Virus record (IMG/VR): IMGVR_UViG_3300049460_000128
Coordinates: 186,001 to 250,000 of that record
DNA: 64,000 bases
Reading direction: 5' to 3' (one strand)
Part shown: positions 22,650 through 52,403 of the stretch, in pieces
How positions within the stretch are numbered: the stretch's first letter is position 1
Layout of the letters: every line of letters starts with the position of its first letter
Translations under genes and position numbers: made by a program
The notes under the pieces: model-generated
Database searches by the model: none
The model's input: the letters and a program-made list of their open reading frames with translations, nothing else
What the model was told of the DNA's origin: nothing

Positions 22650-23393
22650 ATGACATATCAATGCCAAGAATGCACCAAATCATTCACCACAAGGTCTGGG
22701 TTGACCGGCCACAGTCAAACACATAAGGTCAAGAAGCCTATTGTGATGAAAGAATGCTCTATTTGTTTTACTGAATTTGATGCAATGGTCAGACGAAAGA
22801 ATGGCCAATACGTGGTGAAAGAAACATGCTCAGATGACTGTCATTTGGCATTGAGAATAACCAGAGCTACTATGACCAAACGTCCTGATGTTATTTCTCT
22901 TGGCAAAAGTGTACATGGTGACAAGTTTGACTATTCACAAACTGTTTATGTTGATGCTAAAACTCCAATCATGATAGGATGTCCTATACACGGCAGTGTG
23001 AAAGTAAGTATCTACGGCCATTTGAAAAAATATGGCTGTCCTCGGTGTGGGACTGAAGTGAAGTCTAGAGCATTTGTTGATAATGTATTGAACGCACCAG
23101 GTGGAAAAATATCAAAACAAGAAACTATTTGGCTGGATGAGCTTGGTATAGTGGAAAGACAATATAAAGCTCAAACCAGCCAGCGTTCAATATTAGTTGA
23201 TGGGTATGATGCTATTACAAATACGGTGTATCTATTCCATGGCGTTTTTTGGCATGGCCATCCTGATCATTTTCCAGCAGATCAAATGCATCCAATCAAA
23301 CACGCATCATACGGAGAGCTATATGAAAAGACCCTCTTCGAAGAGGGTCTTTTGCGTGATGCTGGTTATAACGTGATTAGTAAATGGGGATAA
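22650..23393 (+). CDS. Zinc-finger plus PD-(D/E)xK/Vsr-like endonuclease, putative free-standing homing endonuclease
   Basis: C2H2 finger CQECTKSFTTRSGLTGHSQTH; further CxxC and CPIHG..H..GCPRC motifs; C-terminal VDGYDAITNTVYLFHGVFWHG; on the opposite strand to all neighbours. Confidence 0.75.
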   Translation: MTYQCQECTKSFTTRSGLTGHSQTHKVKKPIVMKECSICFTEFDAMVRRKNGQYVVKETCSDDCHLALRITRATMTKRPDVISLGKSVHGDKFDYSQTVYVDAKTPIMIGCPIHGSVKVSIYGHLKKYGCPRCGTEVKSRAFVDNVLNAPGGKISKQETIWLDELGIVERQYKAQTSQRSILVDGYDAITNTVYLFHGVFWHGHPDHFPADQMHPIKHASYGELYEKTLFEEGLLRDAGYNVISKWG

Positions 23394-24413
23394 TCATTTG
23401 CCGATGACATTGTCAAACAGGAAGCAATGTGCTCTTGTGGCCACATTATAACCACGAGCAATTGCGCCTTCAGCGACCTTGGCTTGAACCAAACGTTGAC
23501 CCGCCGCGGTGGCACCTACGGGCATGATCCAAACAGGCCAGGTGACGCCAGCAGCGCGGAACAAAGCAGTCGCACGTTCTACCTCATCCCATGCACGATC
23601 GCTGCCATCCGACACGAATTTCAGCTGGCCGGCGTTGCTGAGCGCAGCATACGCGGCTACGATTTCTGGCTTGATGGCGTCATCCCATTTTTCGCCACTC
23701 AGGAACAGTTTAGGCGACACAGACCAGAACCACTCAACACCCTGAAGTGCTTCAACGGCAGGAGGTAGGCCCGTGAACGAATCAGCGCACAGATTTTGCA
23801 GGTCAGTCATGTAGAAGCTTTGCTGCATGGCTTCGCTGTCGATGGTATCAGCATCTGGGAAATGACCGCTCAGATAGCTGGAGAATTTGTCGCGTGCCTT
23901 TTGCGTGCCGTTTGTTTCAACAGTCACGTACTTGGGCATGTTGCCGCGCTTTGCGAACTCTAGCATGATGTCCACGATTGCGTTCTGGGACATCATTGGC
24001 TCGCCGCCCGTAAAGGCCATGTGAGTCCATTGACCAGACTTTGGATGCAGGAAACGACCGTCGGGATTGCTTGGCGATTTCAGGAAGGCTTCCAGCTCAT
24101 CACAGATCTTTTCCACCGACCCTTTGCGGGCAAGGTGTGCGTATTTTTTCGACCACGAATACGAGCTGTCACAACCTTTATTGAACACTGGAAGTTCTTC
24201 CATGCTCTTGTAAGGGGTGATGTCGATCTTGCGGTAATCCAAATCCCATGTTTCAGGCTGATCTGGATTCGTTTGGCCGAAGCCCTCACATTCGAAGTTA
24301 CAGCCCCAGAAACGGATCCAAATTGTCGGAATACCGGTGTATCTTCCTTCGCCCTGGATTGTGTTACCAAAAATCTCAGAGTACTGGTACTCTTTAATGC
24401 GTGTAGTAGTCAT
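23394..24413 (-). CDS. queE: QueE-like radical SAM 7-carboxy-7-deazaguanine synthase
   Basis: EIFGNTIQGEGRYTGIPTIWIRFWGCNFEC...GCDS, FTGGEP, VETNGT, WSVSPKL. Confidence 0.85.
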   Translation of the reverse strand: MTTTRIKEYQYSEIFGNTIQGEGRYTGIPTIWIRFWGCNFECEGFGQTNPDQPETWDLDYRKIDITPYKSMEELPVFNKGCDSSYSWSKKYAHLARKGSVEKICDELEAFLKSPSNPDGRFLHPKSGQWTHMAFTGGEPMMSQNAIVDIMLEFAKRGNMPKYVTVETNGTQKARDKFSSYLSGHFPDADTIDSEAMQQSFYMTDLQNLCADSFTGLPPAVEALQGVEWFWSVSPKLFLSGEKWDDAIKPEIVAAYAALSNAGQLKFVSDGSDRAWDEVERATALFRAAGVTWPVWIMPVGATAAGQRLVQAKVAEGAIARGYNVATRAHCFLFDNVIGK

Positions 24414-24763: not shown

Positions 24764-25042
24764 TCATTCAGTAATTTCAACGAGCTTATAGATACGATAC
24801 GCGCCACGTGGATTGATCACTTGACCGCGTGAGTCAACCTTGCCTTCACGGCGCAGCTGGCTCTCTTCCTGACGGTTGCAATAGTCACGAAACCCTTCTG
24901 CATCTTTCATCGTACCATATTGATTGGTACCACCGTAAGAGTAAAAGCCCACATGACCATCTGGCTTTTCAGGATACCAGGGCCGGCCGACAGCATAGTT
25001 GAATTGTTCGCTCATTCGTATTCCCAAGGATAGACGATCCAT
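24764..25042 (-). CDS. Hypothetical protein
   Basis: 92 aa ORF overlapping the PRT gene end. Confidence 0.6.
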   Translation of the reverse strand: MDRLSLGIRMSEQFNYAVGRPWYPEKPDGHVGFYSYGGTNQYGTMKDAEGFRDYCNRQEESQLRREGKVDSRGQVINPRGAYRIYKLVEITE

Positions 25043-25539
25043 TCTGGCTTTTCGATCTTGTTGATCTCTTCGCCAGAATAGTCTGGACTGAACAGTGTAG
25101 CACCTAAATTGTGCTGCAACACTGCAACTCGAATACGTGCCATGTCGTATGTTTCAAGATCAACATCATAGCCATTGGCTTCAGCAACTGCGGTTGCCAT
25201 ATCGCGAGCATTGGCGAGATGGGTTTCCAACTGTTGGTGAATTTCATGCAGGGTATGACCTTCATCACAGATGTCGTCTACGATGAGCACTCGTTTATTG
25301 CTACGAATAACTTCCACCAATTTTTCAATTGGGTCGGCACCTGGATGATCACGAAGAGAATACTTGAAAGCAACCATAGGTACATCGTAGTAGTGGCTGA
25401 CATGCACGGCAGGAATCATCCCACCGCGCACAAGACCTACCACGATATCTGGTTTGTACTCATCGAGAGCCATTTGACGATACATGACATTCAGCATGTC
25501 GTGCATATCAGTGTAACCGAGATATCGTTTCTTGATCAT
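25012..25539 (-). CDS. Type I purine phosphoribosyltransferase (Gpt/Xpt-like)
   Basis: VVGLVRGG, PRPP loop VLIVDDICDEGHTL, C-terminal WIVYPWE. Confidence 0.88.
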   Translation of the reverse strand: MIKKRYLGYTDMHDMLNVMYRQMALDEYKPDIVVGLVRGGMIPAVHVSHYYDVPMVAFKYSLRDHPGADPIEKLVEVIRSNKRVLIVDDICDEGHTLHEIHQQLETHLANARDMATAVAEANGYDVDLETYDMARIRVAVLQHNLGATLFSPDYSGEEINKIEKPEWIVYPWEYE

Positions 25540-26213
25540 TTGATGTGCTTGACCGAATTCAGGAATTCAGTACGCATACCCAGTTCAGTGCGGAACTTAC
25601 CACCCATGTAGGTAGTAATGGTCGAACTCGTGGAGTCTTCAACACCGCGGGTTTGAACGCACATGTGTTCAGCATCCAGGTGGACTGCTACATCATCCGT
25701 TTTCAGAATGAACTTCAGTGCTTCAGCGATCTGAACGGTCAGACGCTCTTGGATCTGTGGACGACGTGCGAAGTATTCCACGATACGATTCAGCTTGCTC
25801 AGACCCAGTACGGTGCCATTTGGCATGTAGGCAATAGTTGCTTTGCCGATGATTGGGACCAAGTGGTGTTCGCAGTTCGATTGAACCGTGATACCAGTTT
25901 CAACAACCATTTGATCGTAGTTGATTTTGTTTTCAACTGCGGTACACTTTGGGAAATTCTCAGGATCCAGACCCCAGAAGATTTCGCTGGTGTACATTTT
26001 GGCAACGCGCAATGGAGTTTCCATCAGGCTGTCATCTTTCAGATCCATACCCAGAGTTTCCAGAATGCTCGTTACAGCTTTCTCGATCTTGGAGATCTTT
26101 TGTTTGATAGTCAGACCGTTGTCGATCATTGGAGTTTGCAGACCCAACGATTCCAGGTGTGCTTGAACTTGCTTACCCAATTCCGGGTCGGTTTTTGTTT
26201 TGTTAAAAGACAT
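25536..26213 (-). CDS. folE: GTP cyclohydrolase I
   Basis: ETPLRVAKMY, SNCEHH, GLSKLNR, RRPQIQERLT, HMCVQTRG. Confidence 0.95.
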   Translation of the reverse strand: MSFNKTKTDPELGKQVQAHLESLGLQTPMIDNGLTIKQKISKIEKAVTSILETLGMDLKDDSLMETPLRVAKMYTSEIFWGLDPENFPKCTAVENKINYDQMVVETGITVQSNCEHHLVPIIGKATIAYMPNGTVLGLSKLNRIVEYFARRPQIQERLTVQIAEALKFILKTDDVAVHLDAEHMCVQTRGVEDSTSSTITTYMGGKFRTELGMRTEFLNSVKHIK

Positions 26214-26434: not shown

Positions 26435-27412
26435 TTATTTCGTGTACCACTTGTAGGCACTACCGATGATGGACTCGATATTCGAGAAGAATGGAGTCCA
26501 ATGCAATACGTCATGTGCCTCATCAGCATTGGCGATAAGTTCTGCTGGATCACCAGCACGGATGGGACCAACTTCAAGATCGAACATGCCATAACGCTCA
26601 GTCACGTAGTCGATGATCTGCTGATTACTGATGCCCTGGTTGGTGCCAAGATTCAATACTCGTGCTTGTGGTGTGTCATCGGTCAACGTCAACTCAAAAG
26701 CTTTGATGTGTGCTTGTGCGATATCCCAGACGTGGATATAGTCACGAACGCAAGTACCATCAGCTGTTGGATATTCGTTGCCATTCAACACGAAGGTCGT
26801 GTTGTTGATCTTTGCTTCAAGAACACGGGCAACGATATGAGTTGCACCTGGTTCTTGACCCAAGTCTGATGTTCCTGGCATTGCGCCAGCGGCATTGAAG
26901 TAACGGAAGCAGACACTCGGAATGCCGTAAGCTGACTGATAATCAGCCAGGATTTGTTCGGTCATTGCCTTCGTCTTGCCGTAAGGGCTGATGGGATTGA
27001 CGAGATCGCTCTCAAACGCTGGAACGTTAGCTTCGCCGTACACACTAGCGGATGAGCTGAACAATACGACTGGTGACTTCTCCATGTCTTTCAGAGCATT
27101 CAGCAGTTTGATGGTCTTCAACACATTGTTTTCGTAGTATTCGGCTGGATTCTTCACTGAAGGACCAACCAAGCTGGTACCAGCACAATGAACGATCAGG
27201 TCTGGTTTCATGTCAACGATGCCCTGAAGTGTACCCTCATTGGCGAAGTCGTCCATGATAAACCAGTCAACATCTTTCAACGTGTGACCACGACGCACAC
27301 GGTCAACAACTACCATCTTGCAATCAGGATAATGTTGCTTGAATGCGCGTACGATGTGGCTTCCAATGTAGCCGCAGCCACCTGTTACCACTATTGTTTT
27401 TTTATCTGACAT
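26435..27412 (-). CDS. galE: UDP-glucose 4-epimerase
   Basis: GGCGYIGSH, VGPSV, FSSSASVYG, YGKTK, FRYFNAAG, RDYIHVWD. Confidence 0.92.
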   Translation of the reverse strand: MSDKKTIVVTGGCGYIGSHIVRAFKQHYPDCKMVVVDRVRRGHTLKDVDWFIMDDFANEGTLQGIVDMKPDLIVHCAGTSLVGPSVKNPAEYYENNVLKTIKLLNALKDMEKSPVVLFSSSASVYGEANVPAFESDLVNPISPYGKTKAMTEQILADYQSAYGIPSVCFRYFNAAGAMPGTSDLGQEPGATHIVARVLEAKINNTTFVLNGNEYPTADGTCVRDYIHVWDIAQAHIKAFELTLTDDTPQARVLNLGTNQGISNQQIIDYVTERYGMFDLEVGPIRAGDPAELIANADEAHDVLHWTPFFSNIESIIGSAYKWYTK

Positions 27413-27454: not shown

Positions 27455-28630
27455 TTAATACTTCGCAGTACTGGTGTGTTTACGATAATCCGTATCCATA
27501 CGCAACCACTCTTCGCCATTACCCTCAACGATGTCCAGGATACGGTCGATAGTGCCATCATTGTGATCCGAAATCTTGCCGATGTTGCGATGCGGTGCAT
27601 CCAGCAGTTTTTCCAGTTTCAGCAATGCATCTTCCAGACTCCAAGGCACGTACAGGCGCTCGTAGTCATTCGCGAAGGTCTCTGGGAATGAACGATAAGC
27701 TGGGTACAGGACATTCGAACCCAGAGCATCACCTTCGCTCACAGTATTGCTGACCCAATCCTGCAACGCACAGTTGAACAGCACACGAGTGTCATTCAGC
27801 AAGGCGTAGTATTCGTTCTTTTGCAAGCCTTCATGAATGGTCAGAATGCCTTTGGCTTGCAGGTCGCGAGTGCGAGCCATATAGCTGTCGTTGTTGCTCT
27901 TCAGCGCGCCACCTGACATCAGACAAAACTCAACAGGACGATTTGGATGCAAACGCTTCCATTCTTCAGCCAAGTCCATGAAGAAGTCAGGTTGCTTTTC
28001 CTGATCCCAACGCGCAGCAAAGCCAACACGATATGCACGTTCATGGAACGGCTTGATCGAGTCAACACGGCCTACAACTTCTTGTTTGCCAAATGCCAAG
28101 CCCGAGATGTTGTAGATTGGGGCCGTCCAACCAGCAATCTTCATGTGAGCGACCATTTCTTCGTTGGTGGCCAGCACACCGTCAACGAACGAGTCAACCA
28201 TCTTCTCATACAGACCCATCCACTTTTCCATCTTCCACACGTGAACGAAATCATCTGGGTCGATAGTTTGCGCCAAGCAGCGGACGAACACTTTCGGGCG
28301 ATTACTTGCTGGGGTTTGATCCATGATGTATGGCAAGCTTTCGATGCCAGGGGTGTACATGTCTTCAAACAAGATTACGTCGTCGCTGGTAACTTCGCCG
28401 TCTTTCATCATCTTGACCAGACGTGCCATCTGTGTCATTGAGTAGTAGGAACGACCGTGTGCGTCAAGGACTTGCCCAGTAACGATAGCCTTGCTGTTGT
28501 CCAGGTTATCGCCTTCGACAGTCACGAAGTCAACATCGCGACGTTTGAATACTGCTTCATACCATTGCTGCAACTGGTAGGTGTATCGTGCTTGGTAACT
28601 TTCCAAGCCAATATGAAAAAGCTTTCTCAT
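27455..28630 (-). CDS. GT-B fold glycosyltransferase (GT4-like)
   Basis: RWDQEKQP; C-terminal QDWVSNTVSEGDALG resembling the EX7E region; upstream of galE. Confidence 0.78.
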   Translation of the reverse strand: MRKLFHIGLESYQARYTYQLQQWYEAVFKRRDVDFVTVEGDNLDNSKAIVTGQVLDAHGRSYYSMTQMARLVKMMKDGEVTSDDVILFEDMYTPGIESLPYIMDQTPASNRPKVFVRCLAQTIDPDDFVHVWKMEKWMGLYEKMVDSFVDGVLATNEEMVAHMKIAGWTAPIYNISGLAFGKQEVVGRVDSIKPFHERAYRVGFAARWDQEKQPDFFMDLAEEWKRLHPNRPVEFCLMSGGALKSNNDSYMARTRDLQAKGILTIHEGLQKNEYYALLNDTRVLFNCALQDWVSNTVSEGDALGSNVLYPAYRSFPETFANDYERLYVPWSLEDALLKLEKLLDAPHRNIGKISDHNDGTIDRILDIVEGNGEEWLRMDTDYRKHTSTAKY

Positions 28631-28712: not shown

Positions 28713-29099
28713 CTAGTAGTCTTCTGCCGTTTTCAATACAGGGATCCAGCCAAGATCCCTGAAGTGTTGAAGCACGTTATCTAGAACATCAGTCAACTCA
28801 TCCATGTACATGAATACGTAAGTGCTTGTGATTTTGTGATGTGACCAACGAAGTGTTTCAATGATTTGATGTGCGTATCGGTGGGAGCATGCCCACTTAC
28901 GGCGTGAATCGTAGGTGTCCATTGACAGGGCATCAATGACTTGACTTGCTTCGTCTTGGGTGACATCTCGCTGCTTGAACCACTTATATCGTGCGATCAC
29001 GGTATAAAGTTGTCGTGACGTGTCGTCCTCAATCAGCATCTCCACCAAAGCCGGCGAAGTGCTGATATCGGTTTCTAGATCAACGATCCAATCACTCAT
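28713..29099 (-). CDS. Hypothetical protein
   Basis: 128 aa ORF. Confidence 0.6.
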   Translation of the reverse strand: MSDWIVDLETDISTSPALVEMLIEDDTSRQLYTVIARYKWFKQRDVTQDEASQVIDALSMDTYDSRRKWACSHRYAHQIIETLRWSHHKITSTYVFMYMDELTDVLDNVLQHFRDLGWIPVLKTAEDY

Positions 29100-29460
29100 A
29101 CTTGAAGGTCTGCGTCATACGACCTTCCGTGATGGTGATTTCTTGGACTGGGATGATCAGCAGAGTGGCGAACTCATCCTCGATAGCATCCGTCAATTCT
29201 TCAGATATCATAGCCAACGTTTTGTGATCGGCCGTCAGGGTCTTGTTTTTGTACAGTTCATTCAACCATACCGAAACTTCCGGATGAGTCATAACATCCA
29301 GAACATCAGCATACAGCTTAACCTGGATGTCAATCGAATGACGGAAGACTTGCTTGCTCGTTGGTGCAGCCATCACAACGGTGGGATCACCACTGCCGTC
29401 AATATGCAATACACGAGTCACAACCAGATTACAGCCAAGGATCACTTGAGTTGGTTTCAT
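29092..29460 (-). CDS. Hypothetical protein
   Basis: 122 aa ORF coupled to the queD-like gene. Confidence 0.6.
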   Translation of the reverse strand: MKPTQVILGCNLVVTRVLHIDGSGDPTVVMAAPTSKQVFRHSIDIQVKLYADVLDVMTHPEVSVWLNELYKNKTLTADHKTLAMISEELTDAIEDEFATLLIIPVQEITITEGRMTQTFKYE

Positions 29461-29864
29461 TTCTCACCTTTGAATGACATGATGGCGCCGTTTTCGCCGT
29501 CTTCCGCGACTTCAATCGTGGCGTCACGACCAGGATATTTGGCCTTGATTTCATTCCACAGATCGGTGGCAATCATCTCGCACGATTTGAAGTCAAGTTC
29601 AAGCGTGCCGCCCTTGTACAGGTTTTCCAGCCAGCGTTTGAACTGGATAAACTCGATGTCACGGTCAGCATGGAAAATGTCTAGAGTGACGCGGAAATGG
29701 AAGATGTGACGATGTGGATATCCCAGGAACGAAACATCGTATTCATCGCCAGTAGCCAGACTTGGATCAGTCAATGCTGCGGGATATTTGTGGGTGCCCT
29801 CTTTCTGGAAGGTCACGAAGATCTTGGATGCGACCAAGTCTTCAGATGGAGTAAATGCTGCCAT
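29457..29864 (-). CDS. queD: QueD-like 6-carboxytetrahydropterin synthase (T-fold)
   Basis: HRHIFH metal ligands, SCEMIA, IEVAEDGENGA; 135 aa; folE/queE context. Confidence 0.72.
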   Translation of the reverse strand: MAAFTPSEDLVASKIFVTFQKEGTHKYPAALTDPSLATGDEYDVSFLGYPHRHIFHFRVTLDIFHADRDIEFIQFKRWLENLYKGGTLELDFKSCEMIATDLWNEIKAKYPGRDATIEVAEDGENGAIMSFKGEK

Positions 29865-30824: not shown

Positions 30825-31186
30825 TTGTCAGCCCAGGTTAATTTGTACAAGACAGCATCATCCATATTGACGAACACGTAGCCATACATCGCATTGTTGA
30901 AGTCGTGCTTTTTGTCAAGTAAGGGGATGAACTTGTATGTTTTTACTCCCTTGGATTGTATCCACTCCTTGCACTCTGGTGTCCGCAATTGACGAATAAC
31001 ATCAGCCAACGGCATTAGTACCAGAGTGTGATCTGCATGCCACTTATACGTTTGTGGATCAACGACCACGTAGCCACATTCATCCATTGCCGGATCTGCC
31101 AAGTCATAGTTGTTTCCAAACCAGACATGCGGGTCGCAACCTTGCAGTTTGCATTTTTGATTTATTTCTTGCTGAACTTGTTCCAT
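30821..31186 (-). CDS. FKLT-family protein (second cluster)
   Basis: FVNMDDAVLYKLTW. Confidence 0.72.
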   Translation of the reverse strand: MEQVQQEINQKCKLQGCDPHVWFGNNYDLADPAMDECGYVVVDPQTYKWHADHTLVLMPLADVIRQLRTPECKEWIQSKGVKTYKFIPLLDKKHDFNNAMYGYVFVNMDDAVLYKLTWADK

Positions 31187-31722
31187 AGCATCAAATCGAA
31201 GTCAGCTGGAGTCATATTCACTTTCTTGGCTTCTGCCAAGAAAGCTTGCTCCAATACTGGATATTGTTTCGGGCTGGGCGTGCCGGTTGGTACATCATAG
31301 CCAAGCGTTCCCAGGTACTTTGTGATGTGGCGATCTAACACCGCGATGTTTTGATTTGGGCGACTGTGGATCAAAAAGAACCTTGCTGTTTTGTCACCCA
31401 CACCCGTTATGGCTTTCAGCCCGTCAACATCAACCGTGCGCAAATTCAATGCAACACTTTGAGCAAAGCCTTGTGTCAAACGAGTATATTGCCCCAGTCG
31501 TGCTTCTTTCAAATTCGCCGCCAAGGTATCTTTGCTCATCATAACCCGAATACGATCAAATGGCGAACCTGATGTTTCAATCAACAGGAACTTTTCCAAT
31601 GCCCTAGCTTGCGTCCTTGCGGTCTTACCAGCAACTACCTGACAGAACAGCCAATACAATTCTAACTCGGCATCAGTCCTCGTGTAATTGGTTACGATAG
31701 TTGGATCAACAAGTAAATTCAT
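31162..31722 (-). CDS. HhH-GPD DNA glycosylase-like (Ogg2/8-oxoguanine glycosylase-like)
   Basis: HhH LKAITGVGDKTARFFL with a Lys; AVLDRHI with the conserved Asp. Confidence 0.75.
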   Translation of the reverse strand: MNLLVDPTIVTNYTRTDAELELYWLFCQVVAGKTARTQARALEKFLLIETSGSPFDRIRVMMSKDTLAANLKEARLGQYTRLTQGFAQSVALNLRTVDVDGLKAITGVGDKTARFFLIHSRPNQNIAVLDRHITKYLGTLGYDVPTGTPSPKQYPVLEQAFLAEAKKVNMTPADFDLMLWNKFSKK

Positions 31723-33986: not shown

Positions 33987-34733
33987 TTAACGACGTCGTG
34001 CTGGAAGGATATAAGCATAGGTTGCATTCTCAGTAGCTACACTGATTTGCATTGCACCTTTGCTCGTCACATTCACGGAGTAGTCATTGCCGTCTGCCAT
34101 TTTCAGAATCGACAGGAACTGTTGGATTGGCCACAGCAGTTCGCCTTTCAGCTCGCCAGTGATCTCAGTAGCGAAGACCATCTGGGCACGGTGGGTTGCT
34201 GAACCTTCATCGCCGATTGCCAGTACAACATTGCTGTCTTTGGTTTTCACCGAGAAGAACTGCTCGCCTTGCGAGTACAGGCCAGCCAGCGCCGCAAACT
34301 CTTGGATCTTGCTCTTGGTTGGAACGAACGAAATGTCCCATTTGATGTCCGCAACCAGCGGTTGCTCAGGTACCAGATTGCCCGACATCAGGCGGAAATT
34401 GGAACCCATACCGTTTTCGTCACGGAATTCAAACTCTTCTGGAACGCTTTTGCCGCCCAGGTCACGACGTTTAACGTTGAAGGTCGCAGCTTCAGTTTGA
34501 TAGCTGGAGAAGTTCAGCAGACCAGTCAGCAGCGGCAGCGAGCTAACACCAAAGTCGCCGATCAGCGACTCTTGAGTTTCTGCCAGTTTGGCCTTGATGA
34601 TAACGGTCTTTTCGCCATCAACTGCTTCGATCTTGGTTTCTTCAGCTGAACCAGTTACTTTGATGGTGTCGATAAAGCCCAGACCACCAATTTTCTTCAT
34701 CACTTCTTTGAGTACAGTTTGCATATTTGTCAT
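33987..34733 (-). CDS. Putative sliding clamp (gp45-like processivity factor)
   Basis: 248 aa, alternating beta/alpha pattern, C-terminal YAYILPA, directly downstream of the polymerase; assignment by size, context and recall. Confidence 0.65.
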   Translation of the reverse strand: MTNMQTVLKEVMKKIGGLGFIDTIKVTGSAEETKIEAVDGEKTVIIKAKLAETQESLIGDFGVSSLPLLTGLLNFSSYQTEAATFNVKRRDLGGKSVPEEFEFRDENGMGSNFRLMSGNLVPEQPLVADIKWDISFVPTKSKIQEFAALAGLYSQGEQFFSVKTKDSNVVLAIGDEGSATHRAQMVFATEITGELKGELLWPIQQFLSILKMADGNDYSVNVTSKGAMQISVATENATYAYILPARRR

Positions 34734-34825
34734 ACCTTTGTTGTTATTGTTTTCTTGTTGTGCCAGGTGCAGCTCAAGTGTTTGTATTCTACATGAGCTG
34801 CCCTTGATAGCAAATTAAATCTGGC

Positions 34826-37804
34826 TTACCACTTGAACAAATCGTTACTTACATCTTCGTTGGTCAAGGTCAAGTCCCACTTCAAAACACCCAAGAGGTT
34901 GTTCAATTTGAAGTCGATGATTGTCTCTTCCATCGTAGTGTGATCAAACGGCAATTCTTTGAACCACTGCGGCAAGTGCGGCTCGTCAATCGGATAAGCG
35001 ATTGAGGTCATACCCATCGGATTTGGCTTCAGTTTGCAAACAATGATCTTCTGACCATCAGTCAATGACATGGAGAAATTGTCGTTGTGCATCTTACGCA
35101 ATTTCATGTAATTGATCGAGGCCAAAACGTGCCCAGCAATGATGTCTCGCTTCTTCTTTTCATTGGCTTTGTGGCCAGCGTAAATGTCCAGCTTACCAGC
35201 ACTTGCATTATTGACCATGTTCGTTTTCTCAGTCAAGCCATTGCACTTCTTAGGCGAACCTTTTTCCCAACCTGGTTTGTTCCTGAACTCTTTCCTGAAC
35301 ACTTTGATCATGTCAAAGATTTCATCCTGGGACTTACCAGTCAGCGTTGCCATCAGCACGTCTTCCAAGAAGTCTTGCATGTATTGTGGCGTGTCTGAAC
35401 GTTTCAGGTCCAAGCCCATAACTTTCAGCTTACCAGGTTTGCCGTCAATGTCGTAGCGCTCACCCTCTTTGTCGTACATGAGGACCGCGTACTTCTTCTT
35501 CTTGATGAACAAGCCCTTAGAAGCGACGAGTTCGCGACCTGCTGCGATAATTCCACCGCGCTCGATGCCAGTGTTGAAACCCTTGTGCATGAACTCTGGG
35601 AAGCTCTCATTGACTGCATCACCAATGCCATCATACAGTTGAATAATGTTGTCACGAGTGAATTCAAAACTTGCATATTCAGGACGCTTCTGCCATACAG
35701 CTTTCGCACTGAAGTAACTGGAGTCAGTATCCGCGTAGATGATTGCCTCACCCTTGAAGTCATACTCACCTGTGATGATCTCGTTAATCTTCGAGTTCAT
35801 GTGTTTGGCAATCGAACGACCAGTCAACGTTACTGATTGACCAATACGTTTGTCGTAGAACTTCATGCTGGAGTTCAACAACGCACCATACAAACTGTTA
35901 AGCAGAATCTTACGCGCTTGCTGACGTTGATTCCAGAATGTCTTCCAATACTTGGCATCCTTTTCATCATTAGCAGTAATGCGCCCATCTTCGATCACAA
36001 AATTGTGATTGACCATTACCTGAGCTACAACCTTGGCATCTTTCTTGTACAGGGCTTTCGTGAACGCGCCCGAGTCCAAATCATTTGCGGTCAGGGTTGG
36101 CAGCAATCCATTTACTTCAGAGATGAAAGCACTTGGATCAGCATCGAAAGTCTTTGCCAAGTTGGTGCTCTTATCAGTCACATATGCGAAAGTTTTCTCG
36201 CGTGCCTGCATCTCTTTACGCTGACGATACCACGTCGCCAGCAAGCTTGGAATCACGCCAACTTTGTCAGTGCGGAAGATCGTGCCGTTTGCAGTAATGC
36301 ACAGTGGGCGACCTTCGTGGAAGATGAAGTTGTACAGTTCATCAGCCCTAAATACCTTAGTTGTGCCATCTTCAAAGTCAACCGTAATTGCATCCTTGGT
36401 ACGAGCCATAACCTTGTCGTATTCCAGAGTAGAGAATACATTTTCCCACAGTTCAGGCTTTGGTACTTTGTTAGCAATCCGCATTGCGATCATGGCTTCA
36501 GTATCCAGCGGACGAATGTGACCATACAACGTCTCAGGACTCATGTTCAATGCGCGCAGCGTTGATGGGTACAGGGAGTTAATGTCGCAGCAACCAATCT
36601 CATCCTGAATACCAGTCTTCGGCTTGGCCACGTATGCGCCAACGGCCGCATTGCTCAAGTCTTCTTCGTCATCATCGTCCGAATCAAATTCTTCGTCGAA
36701 CTCGTCATCAACTACTTCGGCGGCTTTACGGTCAGGGATGACCATACCCAGGTCATGTGCTTCCAGCATGATCGAGTTTTCGATCAAGGCCACGGAGCCA
36801 TTAGTGGTCTTCAACAGCACGCAGTTGGTGTGCGCAATCTGATTGGCCAGTTCGATGAATTTCTTCTTGGCATCAATCTTAACCATCAGCATAACGTCTT
36901 GACGGTTGTATTCAAGGAAGCGTTCAAAGTCCTTCTTGTACAAGTCGTCTAGCGTACCTTCGTAGACGGTCTTGTTTTCTTTCACCTCAATCTCGCCAAC
37001 GAAGTCAAGACGATATGAGTGCAACTGCTGTGGATTGTGCTTCTGATACAGTTCCAGATAGTCAAGGTGAATACGACCCACTGTATCGTAGGTGATACTT
37101 TTCTTCTTGAACTTGATGTACTCACGACGACGTGGCAATTGATTCCACAAACAGAAGCGACGAGTCTCATCTTTGCTGATCACTCGAGTGATTCGATTCA
37201 CCAAATATGGTACGTCGAAGCCGGTTGAGTTCCAACCAGTAATCACATCTGAGTCTTCAATGATATCCAGGAATGCTTTCAGCATATCACCTTCGTCTTC
37301 GAACAAGAAGCTGTTCTCAAACTTGTCATTGATACGCTGTGCTTCTTCGATCGCCATACCTGGAGGTGGCATGCACAGCGTTACCAATTGATTAGCCCAA
37401 CTCAAGTATACGGAAATTGCGGTCACGTTATTGAACGGGTCTTCGGTTGGTGCGAATCCTCGTTTAGTATCAAACGCGACCTCAATGTCGAAAAATGCGA
37501 TATTGAGTGCTGGTGCTTCAATGTTTCGGTAGTTTTCTTCCAGACTGCGGAAGACAGGATTGACATCGCTTTCAAACAAACGCTTGTTTGCTAGGATGTT
37601 TTTTTCACGGTTAAATGCTTTACCGTTATTGGTACTATACTTGCTGAGGGCATCACCAAAAATACTAACATGGTTGCCTCGTGTATCAGGGTAATACAGT
37701 GTGTAGTTACATGGCAGAGTCTTGTGAACTCGTTCTCCATTTACACGTTCAACGACCAGGATCTGATCTTTCTCCCGGACGTGCATCGCATCAATATAAC
37801 TCAT
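34826..37804 (-). CDS. polB: Family B DNA polymerase with 3'-5' exonuclease
   Basis: ExoI FFDIEV, ExoII GWNSTGFD, ExoIII YNRQD; motif A DINSLYPS, motif B KILLNSLYG, motif C YADTDS, KKKY. Confidence 0.96.
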   Translation of the reverse strand: MSYIDAMHVREKDQILVVERVNGERVHKTLPCNYTLYYPDTRGNHVSIFGDALSKYSTNNGKAFNREKNILANKRLFESDVNPVFRSLEENYRNIEAPALNIAFFDIEVAFDTKRGFAPTEDPFNNVTAISVYLSWANQLVTLCMPPPGMAIEEAQRINDKFENSFLFEDEGDMLKAFLDIIEDSDVITGWNSTGFDVPYLVNRITRVISKDETRRFCLWNQLPRRREYIKFKKKSITYDTVGRIHLDYLELYQKHNPQQLHSYRLDFVGEIEVKENKTVYEGTLDDLYKKDFERFLEYNRQDVMLMVKIDAKKKFIELANQIAHTNCVLLKTTNGSVALIENSIMLEAHDLGMVIPDRKAAEVVDDEFDEEFDSDDDDEEDLSNAAVGAYVAKPKTGIQDEIGCCDINSLYPSTLRALNMSPETLYGHIRPLDTEAMIAMRIANKVPKPELWENVFSTLEYDKVMARTKDAITVDFEDGTTKVFRADELYNFIFHEGRPLCITANGTIFRTDKVGVIPSLLATWYRQRKEMQAREKTFAYVTDKSTNLAKTFDADPSAFISEVNGLLPTLTANDLDSGAFTKALYKKDAKVVAQVMVNHNFVIEDGRITANDEKDAKYWKTFWNQRQQARKILLNSLYGALLNSSMKFYDKRIGQSVTLTGRSIAKHMNSKINEIITGEYDFKGEAIIYADTDSSYFSAKAVWQKRPEYASFEFTRDNIIQLYDGIGDAVNESFPEFMHKGFNTGIERGGIIAAGRELVASKGLFIKKKKYAVLMYDKEGERYDIDGKPGKLKVMGLDLKRSDTPQYMQDFLEDVLMATLTGKSQDEIFDMIKVFRKEFRNKPGWEKGSPKKCNGLTEKTNMVNNASAGKLDIYAGHKANEKKKRDIIAGHVLASINYMKLRKMHNDNFSMSLTDGQKIIVCKLKPNPMGMTSIAYPIDEPHLPQWFKELPFDHTTMEETIIDFKLNNLLGVLKWDLTLTNEDVSNDLFKW

Positions 37805-44044: not shown

Positions 44045-46063
44045 TTATGCCTGAATGTATTCGATAACCAGAACAGCCGCACCTGCTGCGGGACCACCTG
44101 TTACCGTTACAAGCAATTGTGTATCAGTTGCATAATTGGTACTTACGTTCATGTCATACAGCCCAACCGAAGTTTCATCAATCATGTTAGCATCAACCAA
44201 TTCATCAACTGCGCCAACACGACCAACGGTCAATTGTGCGCCAGCTGAGTAAGCGGTTGTTACCTTAACCATCACACGACGTACCAGACCCTTGATAACC
44301 TCACCAATGTTCATGGTTGCAGTCGACAATGTGATTTCGCGAGTTTGCAACGAACCAACCTTGTTTGCAACACCAGCATCACCAACAACCGAAGCCAACT
44401 GACTTACGTTGACTGCATCAGTTGGGGCAACACCATTCGCAACATTGACAATGGTAGTGCTATTGGCACTGATCTTACCAGCACCCTTAGGGGCCAGGAT
44501 CAGATCAATGTCTACTTCCGAACCACCAGTGCTGTATGTGAACGAGGTAGTACCGCTGATCAGTTTACCCTGGCTGGTAGAGCCAGTTGTCATTATGAAA
44601 TTGGTGTGTGTATTACCCGCACCAGTTTGAATAATAACGTCGCCTGAACCCAGAGTACCATTACCACCACGCAGGACCAGATCACCACCAACGGTGTCAG
44701 AGTCGCCACCGGCAACGATCAGGTTAGCATCTCTATCAGCAACGATTTCTGATGTTGAACCAGTTTCACCAATGATTACTTCGCCTAGTGGGCCCTTGGC
44801 ATTCAGACGCAGATTAACATTGTCTTCCAGACTATCAATCGAGAATGTAAACTCGCCGGCAGTCAAGTTGCTGAACACACCGCTCGTATCAGCATTTGGA
44901 CCTGATGCAAAGGTCGCAACACGAGTAGCTAGATCACTTACACCTTTCGCATCAATGGTAACAACACCAACAGATTCGTCAGTTGCAACCATGGAAGTTG
45001 GCGTAGTTTTGTTATCAACAATGCGAGTCGAGCTGAGGTTAGCGATGTCTGAAGCCAAAGCAATCAGTTCATCGGAAACCGTACCGGCATTGTAGGTTAC
45101 ATCACTAGCACTCAACTTAGCATTGATCCAAGCCGTACCATTGTATTTCAGTGCCTGACCGGTAACTGGCGAGGTGATTGTTACATCACTCAGGTCATCA
45201 ATACCATTCGTACCAAATGACAGATTAGTACCGTCACTCTTCAGAATTGTACCAGCAGCACCAACAGCCAGAGTACCCAATGGACCCGTGCCGTTACCAA
45301 TAATCAGTGCTTTGGGTGTGAATGTAGTGGCACCAGTACCGCCATGAGCAACATCAATCGTCGCGCCATTCCAGGTACCAGTGGTGATTGTACCCAGTGT
45401 AGTAATCGATGCTTGACCCAGATAAGTGGAATCAATATCAATACTATCGGCATTGACCAAGATACGACCATTGGTACCAACAACCTTGATTTCTTGACCA
45501 TTACGAACCAGACCATCACCCGCAACAATCAGACCAGCTGATGAGAACTGAGTGAAGTTCAGTGGGGTAGTGCCTACGACAATCGCATCGTCAGTGCTAA
45601 GTGTCCAACCGGTGTCATGGTTAGTCGTGCCTTGCTCCACAAACGTAAATGCGCTTGCGGTAAGGTTTGTACCGTTTGCGTCGCTGGAACGTACCCAGGC
45701 TGACACGGCAACAGTATAAATGCCGTTTTGTGTTGCGTCTGCTTGATCTTTAACCAGGACACGATCGCCTGCCGAAACCATAACATCGTCAATCAGTTGA
45801 CCGCCAGACAGAGTGATGGCAGCAGTAGTTGCAACTTTTACTGATTGTTTTACATCAAGACCTTGGACTCGGTCATCAACATATTTTCGTGTGGCAGCAT
45901 GATTATCATCAGTTGGTGCTGCGACTGAGACATTCGCGTAGCTTTGTTCGTTGGCTGTTCTGAAAGTGAAAGCATCACTTGCCTGAAACACTTTGGCGCC
46001 GCCTTTGCCAAATTGTAATTTAGTACCAACCCCAACTAAGCTGAAATTTTTAATATCGGCCAT
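44045..46063 (-). CDS. Virion fibre/structural protein
   Basis: YVDDRVQGLDVKQSVKVAT...GDRVLVKDQ fibre module, VAHGGTG, Gly/Thr-rich. Confidence 0.8.
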   Translation of the reverse strand: MADIKNFSLVGVGTKLQFGKGGAKVFQASDAFTFRTANEQSYANVSVAAPTDDNHAATRKYVDDRVQGLDVKQSVKVATTAAITLSGGQLIDDVMVSAGDRVLVKDQADATQNGIYTVAVSAWVRSSDANGTNLTASAFTFVEQGTTNHDTGWTLSTDDAIVVGTTPLNFTQFSSAGLIVAGDGLVRNGQEIKVVGTNGRILVNADSIDIDSTYLGQASITTLGTITTGTWNGATIDVAHGGTGATTFTPKALIIGNGTGPLGTLAVGAAGTILKSDGTNLSFGTNGIDDLSDVTITSPVTGQALKYNGTAWINAKLSASDVTYNAGTVSDELIALASDIANLSSTRIVDNKTTPTSMVATDESVGVVTIDAKGVSDLATRVATFASGPNADTSGVFSNLTAGEFTFSIDSLEDNVNLRLNAKGPLGEVIIGETGSTSEIVADRDANLIVAGGDSDTVGGDLVLRGGNGTLGSGDVIIQTGAGNTHTNFIMTTGSTSQGKLISGTTSFTYSTGGSEVDIDLILAPKGAGKISANSTTIVNVANGVAPTDAVNVSQLASVVGDAGVANKVGSLQTREITLSTATMNIGEVIKGLVRRVMVKVTTAYSAGAQLTVGRVGAVDELVDANMIDETSVGLYDMNVSTNYATDTQLLVTVTGGPAAGAAVLVIEYIQA

Positions 46064-46136
46064 ATAGGTTCTCCTGAGGAATGTACGGGTATTTATGCGT
46101 TCAAATGAACAAATGTGCGTACACTTAATTCAAAAA

Positions 46137-46160
46137 GTAAAGGGCACCGCAGTGCCCTTT
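46137..46160 (-). terminator. Terminator-like hairpin
   Basis: AAAGGGCAC-CGCA-GTGCCCTTT. Confidence 0.6.
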
Positions 46161-46184
46161 ATCATGTCTACCTACCAGTAAAAA

Positions 46185-48170: not shown

Positions 48171-48257
48171 CTTTAACTCCTTGTTATGATTTAAATCCCC
48201 GAGTGGGTTTTCGTGGATATTTATATGAACCTAGGCGCCAATTTAACTCTGTGTTAA

Positions 48258-50252: not shown

Positions 50253-50953
50253 TAGAAGGTCACCACAATTTGAACAAAACCGTTGGCAATGGTCGCCATT
50301 GTTGAGACCAATTGATACTGGAAAGTTGTGGTGTTCAAGGCCGTCGTACCAGAGGTCGCCATCTTGACAACACCGGTTGCGGCTGTATTACCACCTGAAA
50401 CATAGACATAGAGTGGATTAGAAGTTGACGTAGTACCAACCCAGAAATTGACTGATTTTGGTGGACGACCAACGTTGTGCGTAATGGTCGTAACGCCACT
50501 AGCAACGGATACAGACCAACCAGATGGCAAATTAGTTGTCAGCGTGGTTGCGGCATCAGCACCATTGGTTGTAGTATTACCGGCATTCATTTGGGAAGTG
50601 AAAATAAACACACCTGGGGCGATACTGTTCGCAGGATTGGCACCACCGCCACCTGATGCTGCATCGAGCGTAACGGTGGTACCGTTGTCAGTAACAGTCA
50701 TGTTGGTGCCAGCAACCAGCTTCTTGAATTCGAAATTACTACCAGTCTTTTGATTGAACACACCCACGCCAGTTGCACCAACGTTCGATGCCGTTTCAGC
50801 ACCAATTTCAACAATGGAATCAGAGCCATTATTCTTCTTCATGAACAGCTTACCATCATTGGTATTCATTGCCAACTCACCCAATGCCAAGTCGGTTGTC
50901 AGTGGAATCTTTGATGCTACCGCGCTACGTTTAATCTTAATCACTTGTGCCAT
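50252..50953 (-). CDS. Fibre protein with Mtd-N-like N-terminal domain
   Basis: IKIKRS...GELAMNTNDGKLF. Confidence 0.72.
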   Translation of the reverse strand: MAQVIKIKRSAVASKIPLTTDLALGELAMNTNDGKLFMKKNNGSDSIVEIGAETASNVGATGVGVFNQKTGSNFEFKKLVAGTNMTVTDNGTTVTLDAASGGGGANPANSIAPGVFIFTSQMNAGNTTTNGADAATTLTTNLPSGWSVSVASGVTTITHNVGRPPKSVNFWVGTTSTSNPLYVYVSGGNTAATGVVKMATSGTTALNTTTFQYQLVSTMATIANGFVQIVVTF

Positions 50954-50969
50954 ATGGCCTCCAGAAGGT

Positions 50970-50996
50970 AAAAAGGGGAGCTATATAGCTCCCCTG
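50970..50996 (-). terminator. Rho-independent terminator
   Basis: AGGGGAGC-TATATA-GCTCCCCT-TTTT. Confidence 0.75.
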
Positions 50997-51022
50997 TGGT
51001 TCAACTATATGTTCCTATTTAC

Positions 51023-52312: not shown

Positions 52313-52403
52313 ATGAATATTCCTTCAAAAAGCGACGAACATTTCCGAGGTTGGTCGCTGGAGTTAAGTATTGTTATTTAGTCGAGATATTGATTTATCT
52401 CGA

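What the first reader, a model, noticed from the sequence alone, without database searches (positions are those of the whole stretch)
27455..28630. Glycosyltransferase recalls the queuosine mannosyltransferase (GTDC1/QTMAN)-type GT4 proteins
Seen: VGFAARWDQEKQPDFF and VLFNCALQDWVSNTVSEGDALGSNVLYPAYRSFPETF. From memory and unverified, GTDC1-like proteins have RWxxDKxPxxFF and a C-terminal ...LEA...P..L.YPEIF block. Established: animal tRNA queuosine is galactosylated or mannosylated by dedicated GTs. If the resemblance holds, a phage GT beside deazaguanine genes and galE would be a strong candidate for a deazapurine-glycosylating enzyme.
Basis: inference. Interest (0 to 1): 0.62.

Follow-up and report, generated by a model that had tools for sequence, protein, structure and literature searches.

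The report
Sugar transferase tied to phage 7-deazaguanine genes
This phage gene encodes a sugar-adding enzyme from a large uncharacterised family that almost always sits inside the gene cluster phages use to replace guanine in their DNA with 7-deazaguanine, so it probably makes a sugar-bearing form of that base, which has not been described.

Summary
The ORF (27455-28630, minus strand, 391 aa) is real and both quoted strings are present. It folds with high confidence as a GT-B glycosyltransferase of the retaining GT4 type.

The recalled GTDC1/QTMAN resemblance is half right. The C-terminal, donor-binding half is closer to the QTMAN family (hhalign E 7.6e-13) than to any of 30 ordinary GT4 controls (best E 1.2e-6). 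The N-terminal half shows no similarity to QTMAN_N (PF12038), the domain that defines that family. So it is not a QTMAN member.

- In 253 loci falling into 46 sequence groups, 45 groups have DpdL within 6 kb. DpdL is the QueD paralogue with the LxxxHRHxF motif, proposed to decarboxylate CDG to 7-deazaguanine.
- QueE, FolE, QueD and a DpdA-like transglycosylase (fold confirmed) usually accompany it.
- No QueC-annotated gene lay beside it in the places looked at.
- Distant family members lie beside DpdL in cultured phages: PA5oct, ACP17, Phosso, Xanthomonas X1/BUDD, Burkholderia BCSR5 and cyanophage BUCT-ZZ01.
- DpdL also occurs without the transferase, as in phiST, whose DNA carries plain 7-deazaguanine.

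I therefore read the transferase as an add-on step after DpdL. The donor is possibly UDP-galactose, given the adjacent GalE. The acceptor atom is unknown. I found no report of a glycosylated 7-deazaguanine in DNA.

The parts
27455..28630 (-). Glycosyltransferase P0001 (391 aa). GT-B fold, GT4-like retaining type. Founding member here of a large phage family.
   Evidence: AF2 pLDDT 94.4. Foldseek and VIA-align Z 23-27 to MshA, BshA, SPS, SenB, BGluT. 67 of 110 homologues hit PF00534. At least 7998 90%-identity clusters and 798 50%-identity representatives.
27980..28027 (-). Motif VGFAARWDQEKQPDFF (residues 202-217), holding the invariant R207-x4-K212 pair and P214. Start of the C-terminal, donor-binding domain.
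   Evidence: Aligned to 'VWPHRWEHDKGP' of the QTMAN family by hhalign. That the R/K pair binds the donor diphosphate is from memory of GT4 enzymes.
27674..27784 (-). Motif block VLFNCALQDWVS...E299...YPAYRSFPE317TF (residues 283-319), the GT4 EX7E-like region.
   Evidence: Aligned to 'STAxHEFFGIAVVEA..GCLPWLP.RLSYPELLP' of the QTMAN family.
29457..29864 (-). DpdL (P0009, 135 aa). QueD paralogue with 'LGYPHRHIF' = LxxxHRHxF. Proposed CDG decarboxylase that makes 7-deazaguanine.
   Evidence: Motif rule from Cui et al. 2023. tblastn hits the paper's DpdL of phiST and ACP17. HMM 152 bits. No PF01242 hit.
26435..27412 (-). UDP-hexose 4-epimerase (GalE-like, P0002), directly downstream of the transferase. 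Possible supplier of the sugar donor.
   Evidence: PF01370 7.5e-45. Present in 57 of 80 close loci but in only 2 of 46 family groups.
25536..26213 (-). GTP cyclohydrolase I (FolE, P0003).
   Evidence: PF01227 2e-63.
25012..25539 (-). 6-oxopurine-type phosphoribosyltransferase (P0004). Candidate for turning the deazaguanine base into a nucleotide.
   Evidence: PF00156 4e-14. Nearest solved structures are purine PRTs: 1vdm 1.9e-12, GpT-1 4e-9.
23394..24413 (-). QueE-like radical SAM CDG synthase (P0005), with about 38 residues inserted between the second and third cluster cysteines.
   Evidence: Weak Pfam hits. Family HMM 257 bits against annotated phage QueE. Cysteine spacing read.
28713..29460 (-). 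Two small ORFs (P0007 128 aa, P0008 122 aa) between DpdL and the transferase. No homologues found in related loci.
31162..31722 (-). Ogg/HhH-type DNA glycosylase-like ORF between the sliding clamp and DpdL. Whether it belongs to the system is uncertain.
   Evidence: PF22175 9e-6, below cut-off. Phosso has an annotated 'glycosylase' at the same place.
33987..37804 (-). Sliding clamp (33987-34733) and family B DNA polymerase (34826-37804). This is the replication module in which the cluster is embedded.

Best explanation
P0001 is an active retaining-type GT-B (GT4-like) glycosyltransferase. It is a dedicated, optional extra enzyme of the QueC-less, DpdL-type 7-deazaguanine pathway of large phages.

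Inferred pathway in this phage: FolE, QueD (from the host or from a part of the genome not held) and QueE make 7-carboxy-7-deazaguanine. DpdL converts it to 7-deazaguanine. In most relatives a DpdA-like transglycosylase puts the base into DNA. This phage has no DpdA-like gene in the 296 kb held but has a 6-oxopurine phosphoribosyltransferase, which suggests a route through nucleotides. The transferase then adds a hexose to the 7-deazaguanine moiety, either as free base or nucleotide or once it is in DNA. The donor is possibly UDP-galactose made by the adjacent GalE. The result would be a glycosylated deazapurine that further shields the DNA from host nucleases.

Shown: the fold, the conserved donor-site residues, and the gene linkage. 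Inferred: the acceptor, the donor, and the order of steps.
For: 1. Fold and catalytic make-up. The AF2 model has pLDDT 94.4 and Z 23-27 to retaining GT4 enzymes. R207, K212 and Y274 are invariant and E299 is nearly so.

2. Linkage across lineages. 45 of 46 sequence groups (60% identity) among 253 loci have DpdL within 6 kb; the one exception has only 107 bp of flank. QueE is present in 42 groups, FolE in 38, QueD in 38 and the DpdA-like family in 36. An unbiased neighbour census gives the same five families first, followed only by replication genes. The commonest compact order is QueD-QueE-FolE-DpdL-GT-DpdA-like.

3. The DpdL ORFs carry the published signature: 229 of 238 have LxxxHRHxF.

4. 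The 288-aa neighbour family folds as a tRNA-guanine transglycosylase. All 50 best PDB hits are TGTs, and it hits PHROG 887 at 2e-24.

5. Distant members (22-26% identity to P0001-type; hhalign versus the family Prob 99.8, E 4e-30) sit next to DpdL in cultured phages of six lineages.

6. The linkage is asymmetric. DpdL occurs without the transferase in phiST (DNA shown to hold plain dDG), RHph_I1_18, Bakedbeans, Ahp1 and D479. That places the transferase after DpdL.

7. PA5oct, which carries the pair, has DNA resistant to G-containing restriction sites, and the modification has not been identified.

8. Cui et al. could not reconstitute dDG from ACP17 DpdL plus DpdA and suspected a missing enzyme. 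ACP17's transferase lies between its candidate DpdA and DpdL.

9. There is a precedent for a GT4-type enzyme glycosylating a 7-deazapurine base: HuiG of huimycin.

10. I saw no alternative acceptor pathway. The genome's ThyA homologue keeps the residues of an ordinary thymidylate synthase.
Against: No chemistry is known for this. 7-deazaguanine and CDG offer no ordinary hydroxyl, so the transfer would have to go to N2, to the carboxylate, or to carbon 7. None of these is documented for a GT4 enzyme acting on DNA.

The family is acidic (median pI 5.8; P0001 5.25), whereas the DpdA-like enzymes are basic (median 9.3). Its nearest folds act on small molecules. Both points argue against direct DNA binding and leave base, nucleotide or DNA open.

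The clusters always sit in replication modules, so some of the linkage within one clade is inherited synteny.

This particular phage lacks QueD and any DpdA-like gene in the 70%-complete record.

GalE is confined to this clade (2 of 46 groups), so the donor inference is weak.
Confidence: 0.55

Rival explanations
1. It makes a small-molecule glycoside rather than a DNA modification. It would glycosylate a pterin intermediate, as cyanobacterial BGluT does with tetrahydrobiopterin, or a free deazapurine that stays a metabolite, like huimycin.
For: BGluT structures are among the close folds (Z 23.5-24.6). All near folds have small-molecule acceptors. The protein is acidic. FolE and a PTPS-like T-fold protein are neighbours. 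HuiG is a precedent.
Against: BGluT is not closer than a dozen other GT4 enzymes (Z values tied). The clusters nearly always carry QueE and a DpdA-like DNA or RNA transglycosylase and sit among replication genes. PA5oct DNA is modified at G.
Confidence: 0.15
2. It is a true QTMAN/GTDC1 orthologue that mannosylates or otherwise glycosylates queuosine in tRNA.
For: The C-terminal domain is closer to the QTMAN family than to 30 ordinary GT4 controls.
Against: There is no QTMAN_N domain in any of 110 members, and the N-domains are unrelated at profile level. The pathway lacks QueC, QueF, QueA and QueG, so no queuosine diol acceptor can be made. The genome has no TGT and only two tRNA-Met.
Confidence: 0.03
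3. It glycosylates a hydroxylated pyrimidine in DNA (5hmC, 5hmU or 5hoC), as the T4, RB69 and RL38J1 transferases do, and its position next to the deazaguanine genes is coincidental.
For: That is the known role of phage DNA glycosyltransferases. GalE-type sugar genes accompany such systems.
Against: The only thymidylate-synthase homologue in the 296 kb keeps the L143, C146, D169 and N177 equivalents, so by the published rule it is an ordinary dUMP methylase. Compact six-gene modules in small contigs hold no pyrimidine-modifying gene. The tie to DpdL in 45 of 46 groups would be unexplained.
Confidence: 0.05
4. It is an ordinary cell-envelope or protein glycosyltransferase (LPS, capsule, or virion protein), carried as an auxiliary gene.
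For: Best sequence-profile PDB hits are PglA/WlaC and GlgM. One source annotates a member as a cell-wall glycosyltransferase.
Against: Those hits are weak (E 4.5e-4). The family is almost wholly viral. It is embedded in replication and deazaguanine modules in every lineage examined.
Confidence: 0.04

Closest known systems
QTMAN / GTDC1 (tRNA-queuosine alpha-mannosyltransferase; Pfam QTMAN_N PF12038 + Glycos_transf_1)
   Same: GT-B architecture. The C-terminal domain shares the variant motifs R-W-[DE]-x-[DE]-K-x-P and LEA...GC.P..P...S[YF]PE. Profile similarity is E 7.6e-13, better than for 30 ordinary GT4 controls. The substrate of QTMAN is also a 7-deazaguanine derivative.
   Different: There is no detectable QTMAN_N domain. 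QTMAN's acceptor is the cyclopentenediol of queuosine in tRNA, which this pathway cannot make. The genomic setting here is phage DNA-modification genes. No QTMAN structure turned up in the PDB copy searched by sequence, so the folds could not be compared.
DpdL-type dDG pathway of Cellulophaga phage phiST (Cui et al. 2023, NAR)
   Same: The same gene set (FolE, QueD, QueE, DpdL with LxxxHRHxF), no QueC seen, a divergent DpdA-like transglycosylase, and a location next to the DNA polymerase.
   Different: phiST has no member of this transferase family within 6 kb of DpdL (the flank fetched), and its DNA holds unglycosylated 7-deazaguanine. The clusters described here add the transferase, and in this clade also GalE and a purine PRT.
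HuiG of huimycin biosynthesis (GT4-type, PF13439)
   Same: A GT4-family enzyme encoded beside FolE, QueD and QueE-type genes that puts a sugar on a 7-deazapurine base.
   Different: HuiG belongs to actinomycete secondary metabolism. Its acceptor is an O-methylated preQ0 free base (at the 2-amino group, from memory) and its donor is UDP-GlcNAc. Its cluster contains QueC and no DpdA. Sequence relatedness to P0001 was not tested.
Phage DNA glycosyltransferases (T4 alpha/beta-GT on 5hmC; RB69/DLP3 arabinosyltransferases on 5hoC)
   Same: Phage-encoded sugar transfer as a second layer on a non-canonical base, sometimes with phage-encoded NDP-sugar enzymes.
   Different: Those act on a pyrimidine hydroxyl. 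They did not appear among the 50 best structural matches. Here the linked base is a purine analogue with no obvious hydroxyl.
BGluT (UDP-glucose:tetrahydrobiopterin alpha-glucosyltransferase, PDB 5ze7, 9v0l)
   Same: GT4 fold with Z 23.5-24.6. The acceptor derives from GTP through FolE and a T-fold enzyme.
   Different: It is not closer than many other GT4 enzymes. BGluT is not linked to QueE or DpdA.

Membership tests
QTMAN / GTDC1 family | N-terminal QTMAN_N domain (Pfam PF12038) | tested here: not met
   No hit for P0001 at E<=1 or for any of 110 homologues at E<=0.01. hhalign of N-domain against N-domain gives Prob 1.4. The same model scores 152 bits on a bacterial homologue.
QTMAN / GTDC1 family | C-terminal Glycos_transf_1-type domain with the HRWEHDK.P and LEA..GC.P..P..SYPE motifs | tested here: met
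   A3C versus A1C gives Prob 97.8, E 7.6e-13. Seven single QTMAN-family sequences score 69-79, against at most 52.9 for 30 GT4 controls.
QTMAN / GTDC1 family | Acts on queuosine-34 of tRNA with GDP-mannose | not testable with these tools
   Indirect evidence against: no TGT, no convincing QueC, and no GUN-anticodon tRNA in the genome held.
GT4-like retaining GT-B glycosyltransferases | Two Rossmann-like domains (GT-B) with closest structures in CAZy GT4 | tested here: met
   pLDDT 94.4. Z 23-27 over 300-346 residues to MshA, BshA, SPS, PimA, SenB.
GT4-like retaining GT-B glycosyltransferases | Donor-site residues: the R-x4-K pair and the acidic residues of the EX7E region | tested here: met
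   R207 and K212 are invariant; D291 and E299 are at least 90% conserved; E317 is at least 90% conserved among the closer homologues. The roles of these residues are assigned from memory of GT4 enzymes, not tested.
GT4-like retaining GT-B glycosyltransferases | Pfam Glycos_transf_1 above the gathering score | tested here: inconclusive
   P0001 itself has only PF13524 at 14.4 bits (cut-off 25). 67 of 110 homologues hit PF00534 at E<=0.01.
DpdL-type 7-deazaguanine DNA-modification cluster (Cui et al. 2023) | DpdL with LxxxHRHxF in place of QueD's CxxxHGH | tested here: met
   P0009 has 'LGYPHRHIF'. 229 of 238 family ORFs carry the motif. It is homologous to phiST and ACP17 DpdL.
DpdL-type 7-deazaguanine DNA-modification cluster (Cui et al. 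2023) | FolE, QueD and QueE present, QueC absent | tested here: inconclusive
   FolE and QueE are present. QueD was not found in the 296 kb. PF06508 gives only 27 and 20 bits, at places far from the cluster. The record is about 70% complete.
DpdL-type 7-deazaguanine DNA-modification cluster (Cui et al. 2023) | A DpdA-family DNA transglycosylase | tested here: not met
   For this phage, PF01702 and the HMMs of three DpdA-like families find nothing in the genome. It is met in relatives: 36 of 46 groups carry the TGT-fold family and others carry the PAC2_540/ACP17_424 family.
DpdL-type 7-deazaguanine DNA-modification cluster (Cui et al. 2023) | 7-deazaguanine actually present in virion DNA | not testable with these tools
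   Only indirect evidence: PA5oct DNA resists enzymes whose sites contain G.

The most novel reading that the evidence does not exclude
The enzyme attaches a hexose directly to 7-deazaguanine, for example by C-glycosylation of the electron-rich carbon 7 that replaces N7, or at N2. This would give the first glycosylated purine analogue in any DNA. The dependence on DpdL would then exist because removing the carboxyl group exposes the acceptor position. It would also explain why dDG could not be reconstituted from ACP17 genes without it, and would identify the unknown G modification of PA5oct-like jumbo phages.
Probability: 0.3. Interest if true: 0.9.

Novelty: new variant of a known kind. Interest (0 to 1): 0.78.

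Why it matters
Phage DNA hypermodifications decide which restriction, CRISPR and glycosylase defences a phage escapes. They also supply enzymes for biotechnology.

Sugars are known on modified pyrimidines, and eight 7-deazaguanine derivatives are known in DNA. A combination of the two has not been reported in the literature I could search.

This family is very abundant: at least 7998 sequence clusters and hundreds of IMG/VR contigs from jumbo and mid-sized phages. It is present in cultured phages, including PA5oct-like viruses of Pseudomonas aeruginosa. The prediction can therefore be tested at once by mass spectrometry.

It also offers an explanation for two published loose ends: the unidentified G modification of PA5oct, and the failed reconstitution of the DpdL step from ACP17.

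Tried and rejected
- **Sequence searches on P0001.** Direct Pfam, PHROGs and PDB sequence searches gave almost nothing. The family had to be built from metagenome representatives.
- **Nucleotide search of the phage collection.** Megablast of the region against the phage collection gave no match.
- **tblastn with P0001.** It found only BUCT-ZZ01. The members in PA5oct, ACP17 and Phosso appeared only after I noticed an annotated transferase beside Phosso's DpdL and searched with that.
- **Sliding clamp as DpdA3.** The 248-aa ORF after PolB, which I first suspected to be DpdA3, is a sliding clamp.
- **DpdA-like families versus TGT.** HMM and hhalign tests of these families against a three-sequence TGT profile, PDB and Pfam were negative. 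Only the fold and PHROGs showed the relationship, and only for the 288-aa family. For the PAC2_540/ACP17_424 family I have only TGT-like motifs (DSGGFQ, FDCASPF; the TGT motifs are from memory) and position. That assignment stays an inference.
- **QTMAN in the PDB.** No QTMAN structure turned up by sequence, so the fold search could not rank it.
- **ESM Atlas shape search.** It returned only the family itself.
- **Genome-collection scan.** It found only MAG contigs 63-75% identical, presumably phage DNA binned into MAGs.
- **Gene fusions.** None were found between the transferase and any pathway enzyme.
- **Conserved oxidoreductase or hydroxylase.** None that could create an acceptor hydroxyl was found.
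Full report
**Observation.** The window is bases 186001-250000 of a 296,594-bp IMG/VR virus record, estimated about 70% complete. A rhizosphere metagenome run holds the stretch and may be its source. The record is a jumbo phage with a family B polymerase, a sliding clamp, FtsH-, ClpB- and DnaJ-like genes and fibre genes.

ORF 27455-28630 on the minus strand encodes 391 aa (P0001). On the same strand it is flanked:
- downstream by a GalE-type epimerase, FolE, a purine phosphoribosyltransferase and a QueE-like radical SAM enzyme;
- upstream, after two orphan ORFs, by a 135-aa protein.

**What the protein is.** P0001 alone gives only a sub-threshold Pfam hit (PF13524, 14 bits), no PHROG and no PDB relative. 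The family is nevertheless very large:
- at least 7998 clusters at 90% identity, many on contigs of 100-380 kb;
- 798 representatives at 50% identity with E<=1e-3.

An alignment of 110 full-length homologues of 28-58% identity (A1) has R15, D90, D127, R207, K212, P214 and Y274 invariant, and E299 and many N-domain residues nearly so. 67 of the 110 hit Glycos_transf_1.

AlphaFold2 with this alignment gives pLDDT 94.4. The model is a GT-B fold. Its best matches, all tied at Z 23-27 over 300-346 residues, are retaining GT4 enzymes, most with small-molecule acceptors: sucrose-phosphate synthase, MshA, BshA, SenB, PimA, LmbT and the pterin glucosyltransferase BGluT. The T4 DNA glucosyltransferases are not among the 50 best.

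**The GTDC1/QTMAN claim.** Pfam now calls PF12038 'QTMAN_N'. No family member hits it. I obtained a real bacterial QTMAN-family protein from a Phycisphaerae MAG (152 bits to QTMAN_N) and built a 35-sequence family alignment, A3.

Profile-profile comparison gave:

| Comparison | Result |
|---|---|
| A3 vs A1, whole length | Prob 96.8, E 2.5e-10, aligned over the C-terminal domain only |
| C-domains alone | E 7.6e-13 |
| N-domains alone | Prob 1.4 |
| 7 single QTMAN-family sequences vs A1 | scores 69-79 |
| 30 ordinary Glycos_transf_1 proteins from the same three genomes vs A1 | best E 1.2e-6, score 52.9 |

The defining N-terminal domain, however, is not shared.

No QTMAN structure turned up in the PDB copy by sequence, so fold ranking could not address this. 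I cannot say that QTMAN is the nearest of all GT families, only the nearest of those I tested.

**The neighbour is DpdL, not QueD.** Cui et al. 2023 define DpdL as a QueD paralogue in which CxxxHGH has become LxxxHRHxF. They propose it decarboxylates CDG to 7-deazaguanine. It is found in phages with FolE, QueD, QueE and a DpdA but no QueC. Phage phiST, which has it, carries dDG in place of all G.

P0009 reads 'LGYPHRHIF'. By tblastn it hits the DpdL of phiST and ACP17, and also PA5oct-like phages and Sinorhizobium phage Phosso (72% identity).

**Conserved context.**
- *Close relatives.* In 80 IMG/VR loci the order is PolB - clamp - ... - DpdL - GT - (GalE) - FolE - (PRT) - QueE.
- *Distant metagenomic homologues (30-45% identity).* These also lie next to PTPS-like, radical SAM and FolE genes on small contigs, each with a DpdL homologue.
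- *Phosso.* It has an annotated glycosyltransferase right after DpdL. It is only 22% identical to P0001 but matches the family profile at Prob 99.8, E 4e-30.
- *Other cultured phages.* Searching with the Phosso protein found members beside DpdL in the PA5oct group (11 records), ACP17, Xanthomonas X1 and BUDD, Burkholderia BCSR5 and Synechococcus BUCT-ZZ01.

I then fetched about 160 more loci with three sub-family profiles and scored all flanks with HMMs built from tool-derived seeds. The 253 loci fall into 46 groups at 60% identity. Counts within 6 kb of the transferase:

| Family | Groups (of 46) |
|---|---|
| DpdL | 45 (the exception has 107 bp of flank) |
| QueE | 42 |
| FolE | 38 |
| QueD | 38 |
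| 288-aa family | 36 |

229 of 238 DpdL ORFs carry LxxxHRHxF. An unbiased clustering of all neighbours gives the same five families first. After them come only a clamp, PolA, a DnaB-like helicase and a clamp loader. No conserved oxidoreductase appears.

The 288-aa family folds (pLDDT 86.7) as a tRNA-guanine transglycosylase, and all 50 best PDB hits are TGTs. It also matches PHROG 887, 'queuine tRNA-ribosyltransferase'. It is therefore a DpdA-like enzyme.

A second family stands in for it in the jumbo and T4-like lineages: PAC2_540, related to ACP17_424 at E 2e-10. It carries TGT-like motifs such as DSGGFQ. Its assignment is an inference.

**Direction of dependence.** The transferase practically never occurs without DpdL. 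DpdL, however, occurs without the transferase in phiST, RHph_I1_18, Bakedbeans, Ahp1 and D479. I checked these with the family HMM and hhalign over up to +-10 kb (+-6 kb for phiST). This asymmetry is what one expects of an add-on step that uses the product of DpdL.

**This phage in particular.** The 296 kb held contain DpdL, GT, GalE, FolE, PRT and QueE. They contain no QueD, no DpdA-like gene of any of the three families, and no convincing QueC.

The PRT is nearest to 6-oxopurine phosphoribosyltransferases. I therefore infer that here the base enters DNA through the nucleotide pool and the phage's own polymerase, with host QueD supplying CPH4. A missing 30% of the genome could change this picture.

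The ThyA homologue keeps the residues of an ordinary thymidylate synthase by the rule of Lee et al. 2026. I see no hydroxylated pyrimidine for the transferase to use. Only two tRNA-Met genes are present.

**Mechanism.** Shown: a GT4-like fold with conserved donor-site residues, and obligate linkage to DpdL-type deazaguanine genes across many lineages.

Inferred: the enzyme adds a hexose to the 7-deazaguanine moiety after DpdL. UDP-Gal is suggested only by the adjacent GalE, which is clade-specific.

Whether the acceptor is the free base, a nucleotide or DNA is open:
- The acidic pI (5.25; family median 5.8, against 9.3 for the DpdA-like enzymes) and the small-molecule GT4 neighbours favour base or nucleotide.
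- From memory, eukaryotic TGT inserts the bulky base queuine, so a glycosylated base could in principle be inserted afterwards.
- The acceptor atom is unknown, because 7-deazaguanine has no hydroxyl. N2 (as in huimycin's HuiG; the atom is from memory) and the electron-rich C7 are candidates.

**Published loose ends that fit.** PA5oct DNA resists several enzymes with G in their sites, and its modification is unidentified. Cui et al. could not obtain dDG from ACP17 DpdL plus DpdA and suspected a missing enzyme. In ACP17 the transferase lies between the candidate DpdA and DpdL.

**Novelty.** Seven full-text searches found no report of a glycosyltransferase in phage 7-deazaguanine clusters or of a glycosylated deazaguanine in DNA. 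Subscription journals are largely outside that library, so this is not proof of absence. I rate it a new variant of a known kind, namely phage DNA hypermodification, with a real chance of new chemistry.

**Limits.**
- All functional statements rest on context and fold.
- The GT4 control set was 30 proteins from three genomes.
- HMMs for neighbour families were home-made and iterated once. 105 of 162 'QueD' hits lack CxxxHGH, so the QueD counts are soft.
- Loci within a group share ancestry, so I counted groups, not loci.

Noticed in passing
window 22650-23393 (+): A 247-aa ORF on the opposite strand, abutting QueE, with a C2H2 zinc finger, DUF723 and a weak Vsr-like end. It looks like a homing endonuclease. 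Similar ORFs sit between DpdL and the transferase in loci L035 and L036, and HNH or homing endonucleases interrupt the cluster in L088 and in phage D479.
   Followed up: partly
window 23394-24413 (-): The QueE-like protein has its radical SAM cysteines spaced C38-x3-C42-x38-C81 ('GCNFEC...KGCDSSYSW'). That is about 38 residues inserted where ordinary QueE has CxxxCxxC.
   Followed up: no
G000 C1:176451-177587 (outside the window; locus L004 1498-2640): A thymidylate synthase homologue of 380 aa with two insertions relative to E. coli ThyA but canonical active-site residues ('MALPPCH', 'QRSGDAFLGIPFN'). By the published rule it is an ordinary dTMP synthase.
   Followed up: partly
window 31162-31722 (-); Phosso locus L090 11394-11927: An Ogg/HhH-type DNA glycosylase-like gene lies between the sliding clamp and DpdL in this phage. 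Phosso has an annotated glycosylase at the same place, where most relatives have the 500-aa TGT-motif protein. Whether it replaces the transglycosylase is unknown.
   Followed up: no
loci of the window's clade (e.g. L254 13560-14912); BUCT-ZZ01 L001 6010-7353: Many relatives carry a second, roughly 450-aa GT-B transferase after QueE (hhalign versus the family E 8e-9 over both domains). This hints at di-glycosylation. This phage lacks it.
   Followed up: partly
Vibrio phage Bakedbeans, locus L300 9188-10369: Here DpdL is the C-terminal third of a 383-393-aa ORF. The N-terminal 260 residues match none of my family models.
   Followed up: no
window 28713-29460 (-): Two small ORFs (128 and 122 aa) between DpdL and the transferase have no homologue in 80 closely related loci and no Pfam or PHROG hit.
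   Followed up: partly
window 9660-11627, 57510-59816, 60325-61299 (all -): The phage encodes an FtsH-like AAA/M41 protease, a ClpB-type disaggregase and a DnaJ co-chaperone.
   Followed up: no
window 44045-54533 (-): A run of large fibre-like genes with YadA-stalk, flagellin-IN and collagen triple-helix repeats.
   Followed up: no
PA5oct-like phage PAC2, locus L091 10800-11318: A truncated, 170-aa epimerase-domain protein sits between DpdL and the PRT. This shows that a sugar-nucleotide enzyme accompanies the transferase in a second lineage.
   Followed up: no
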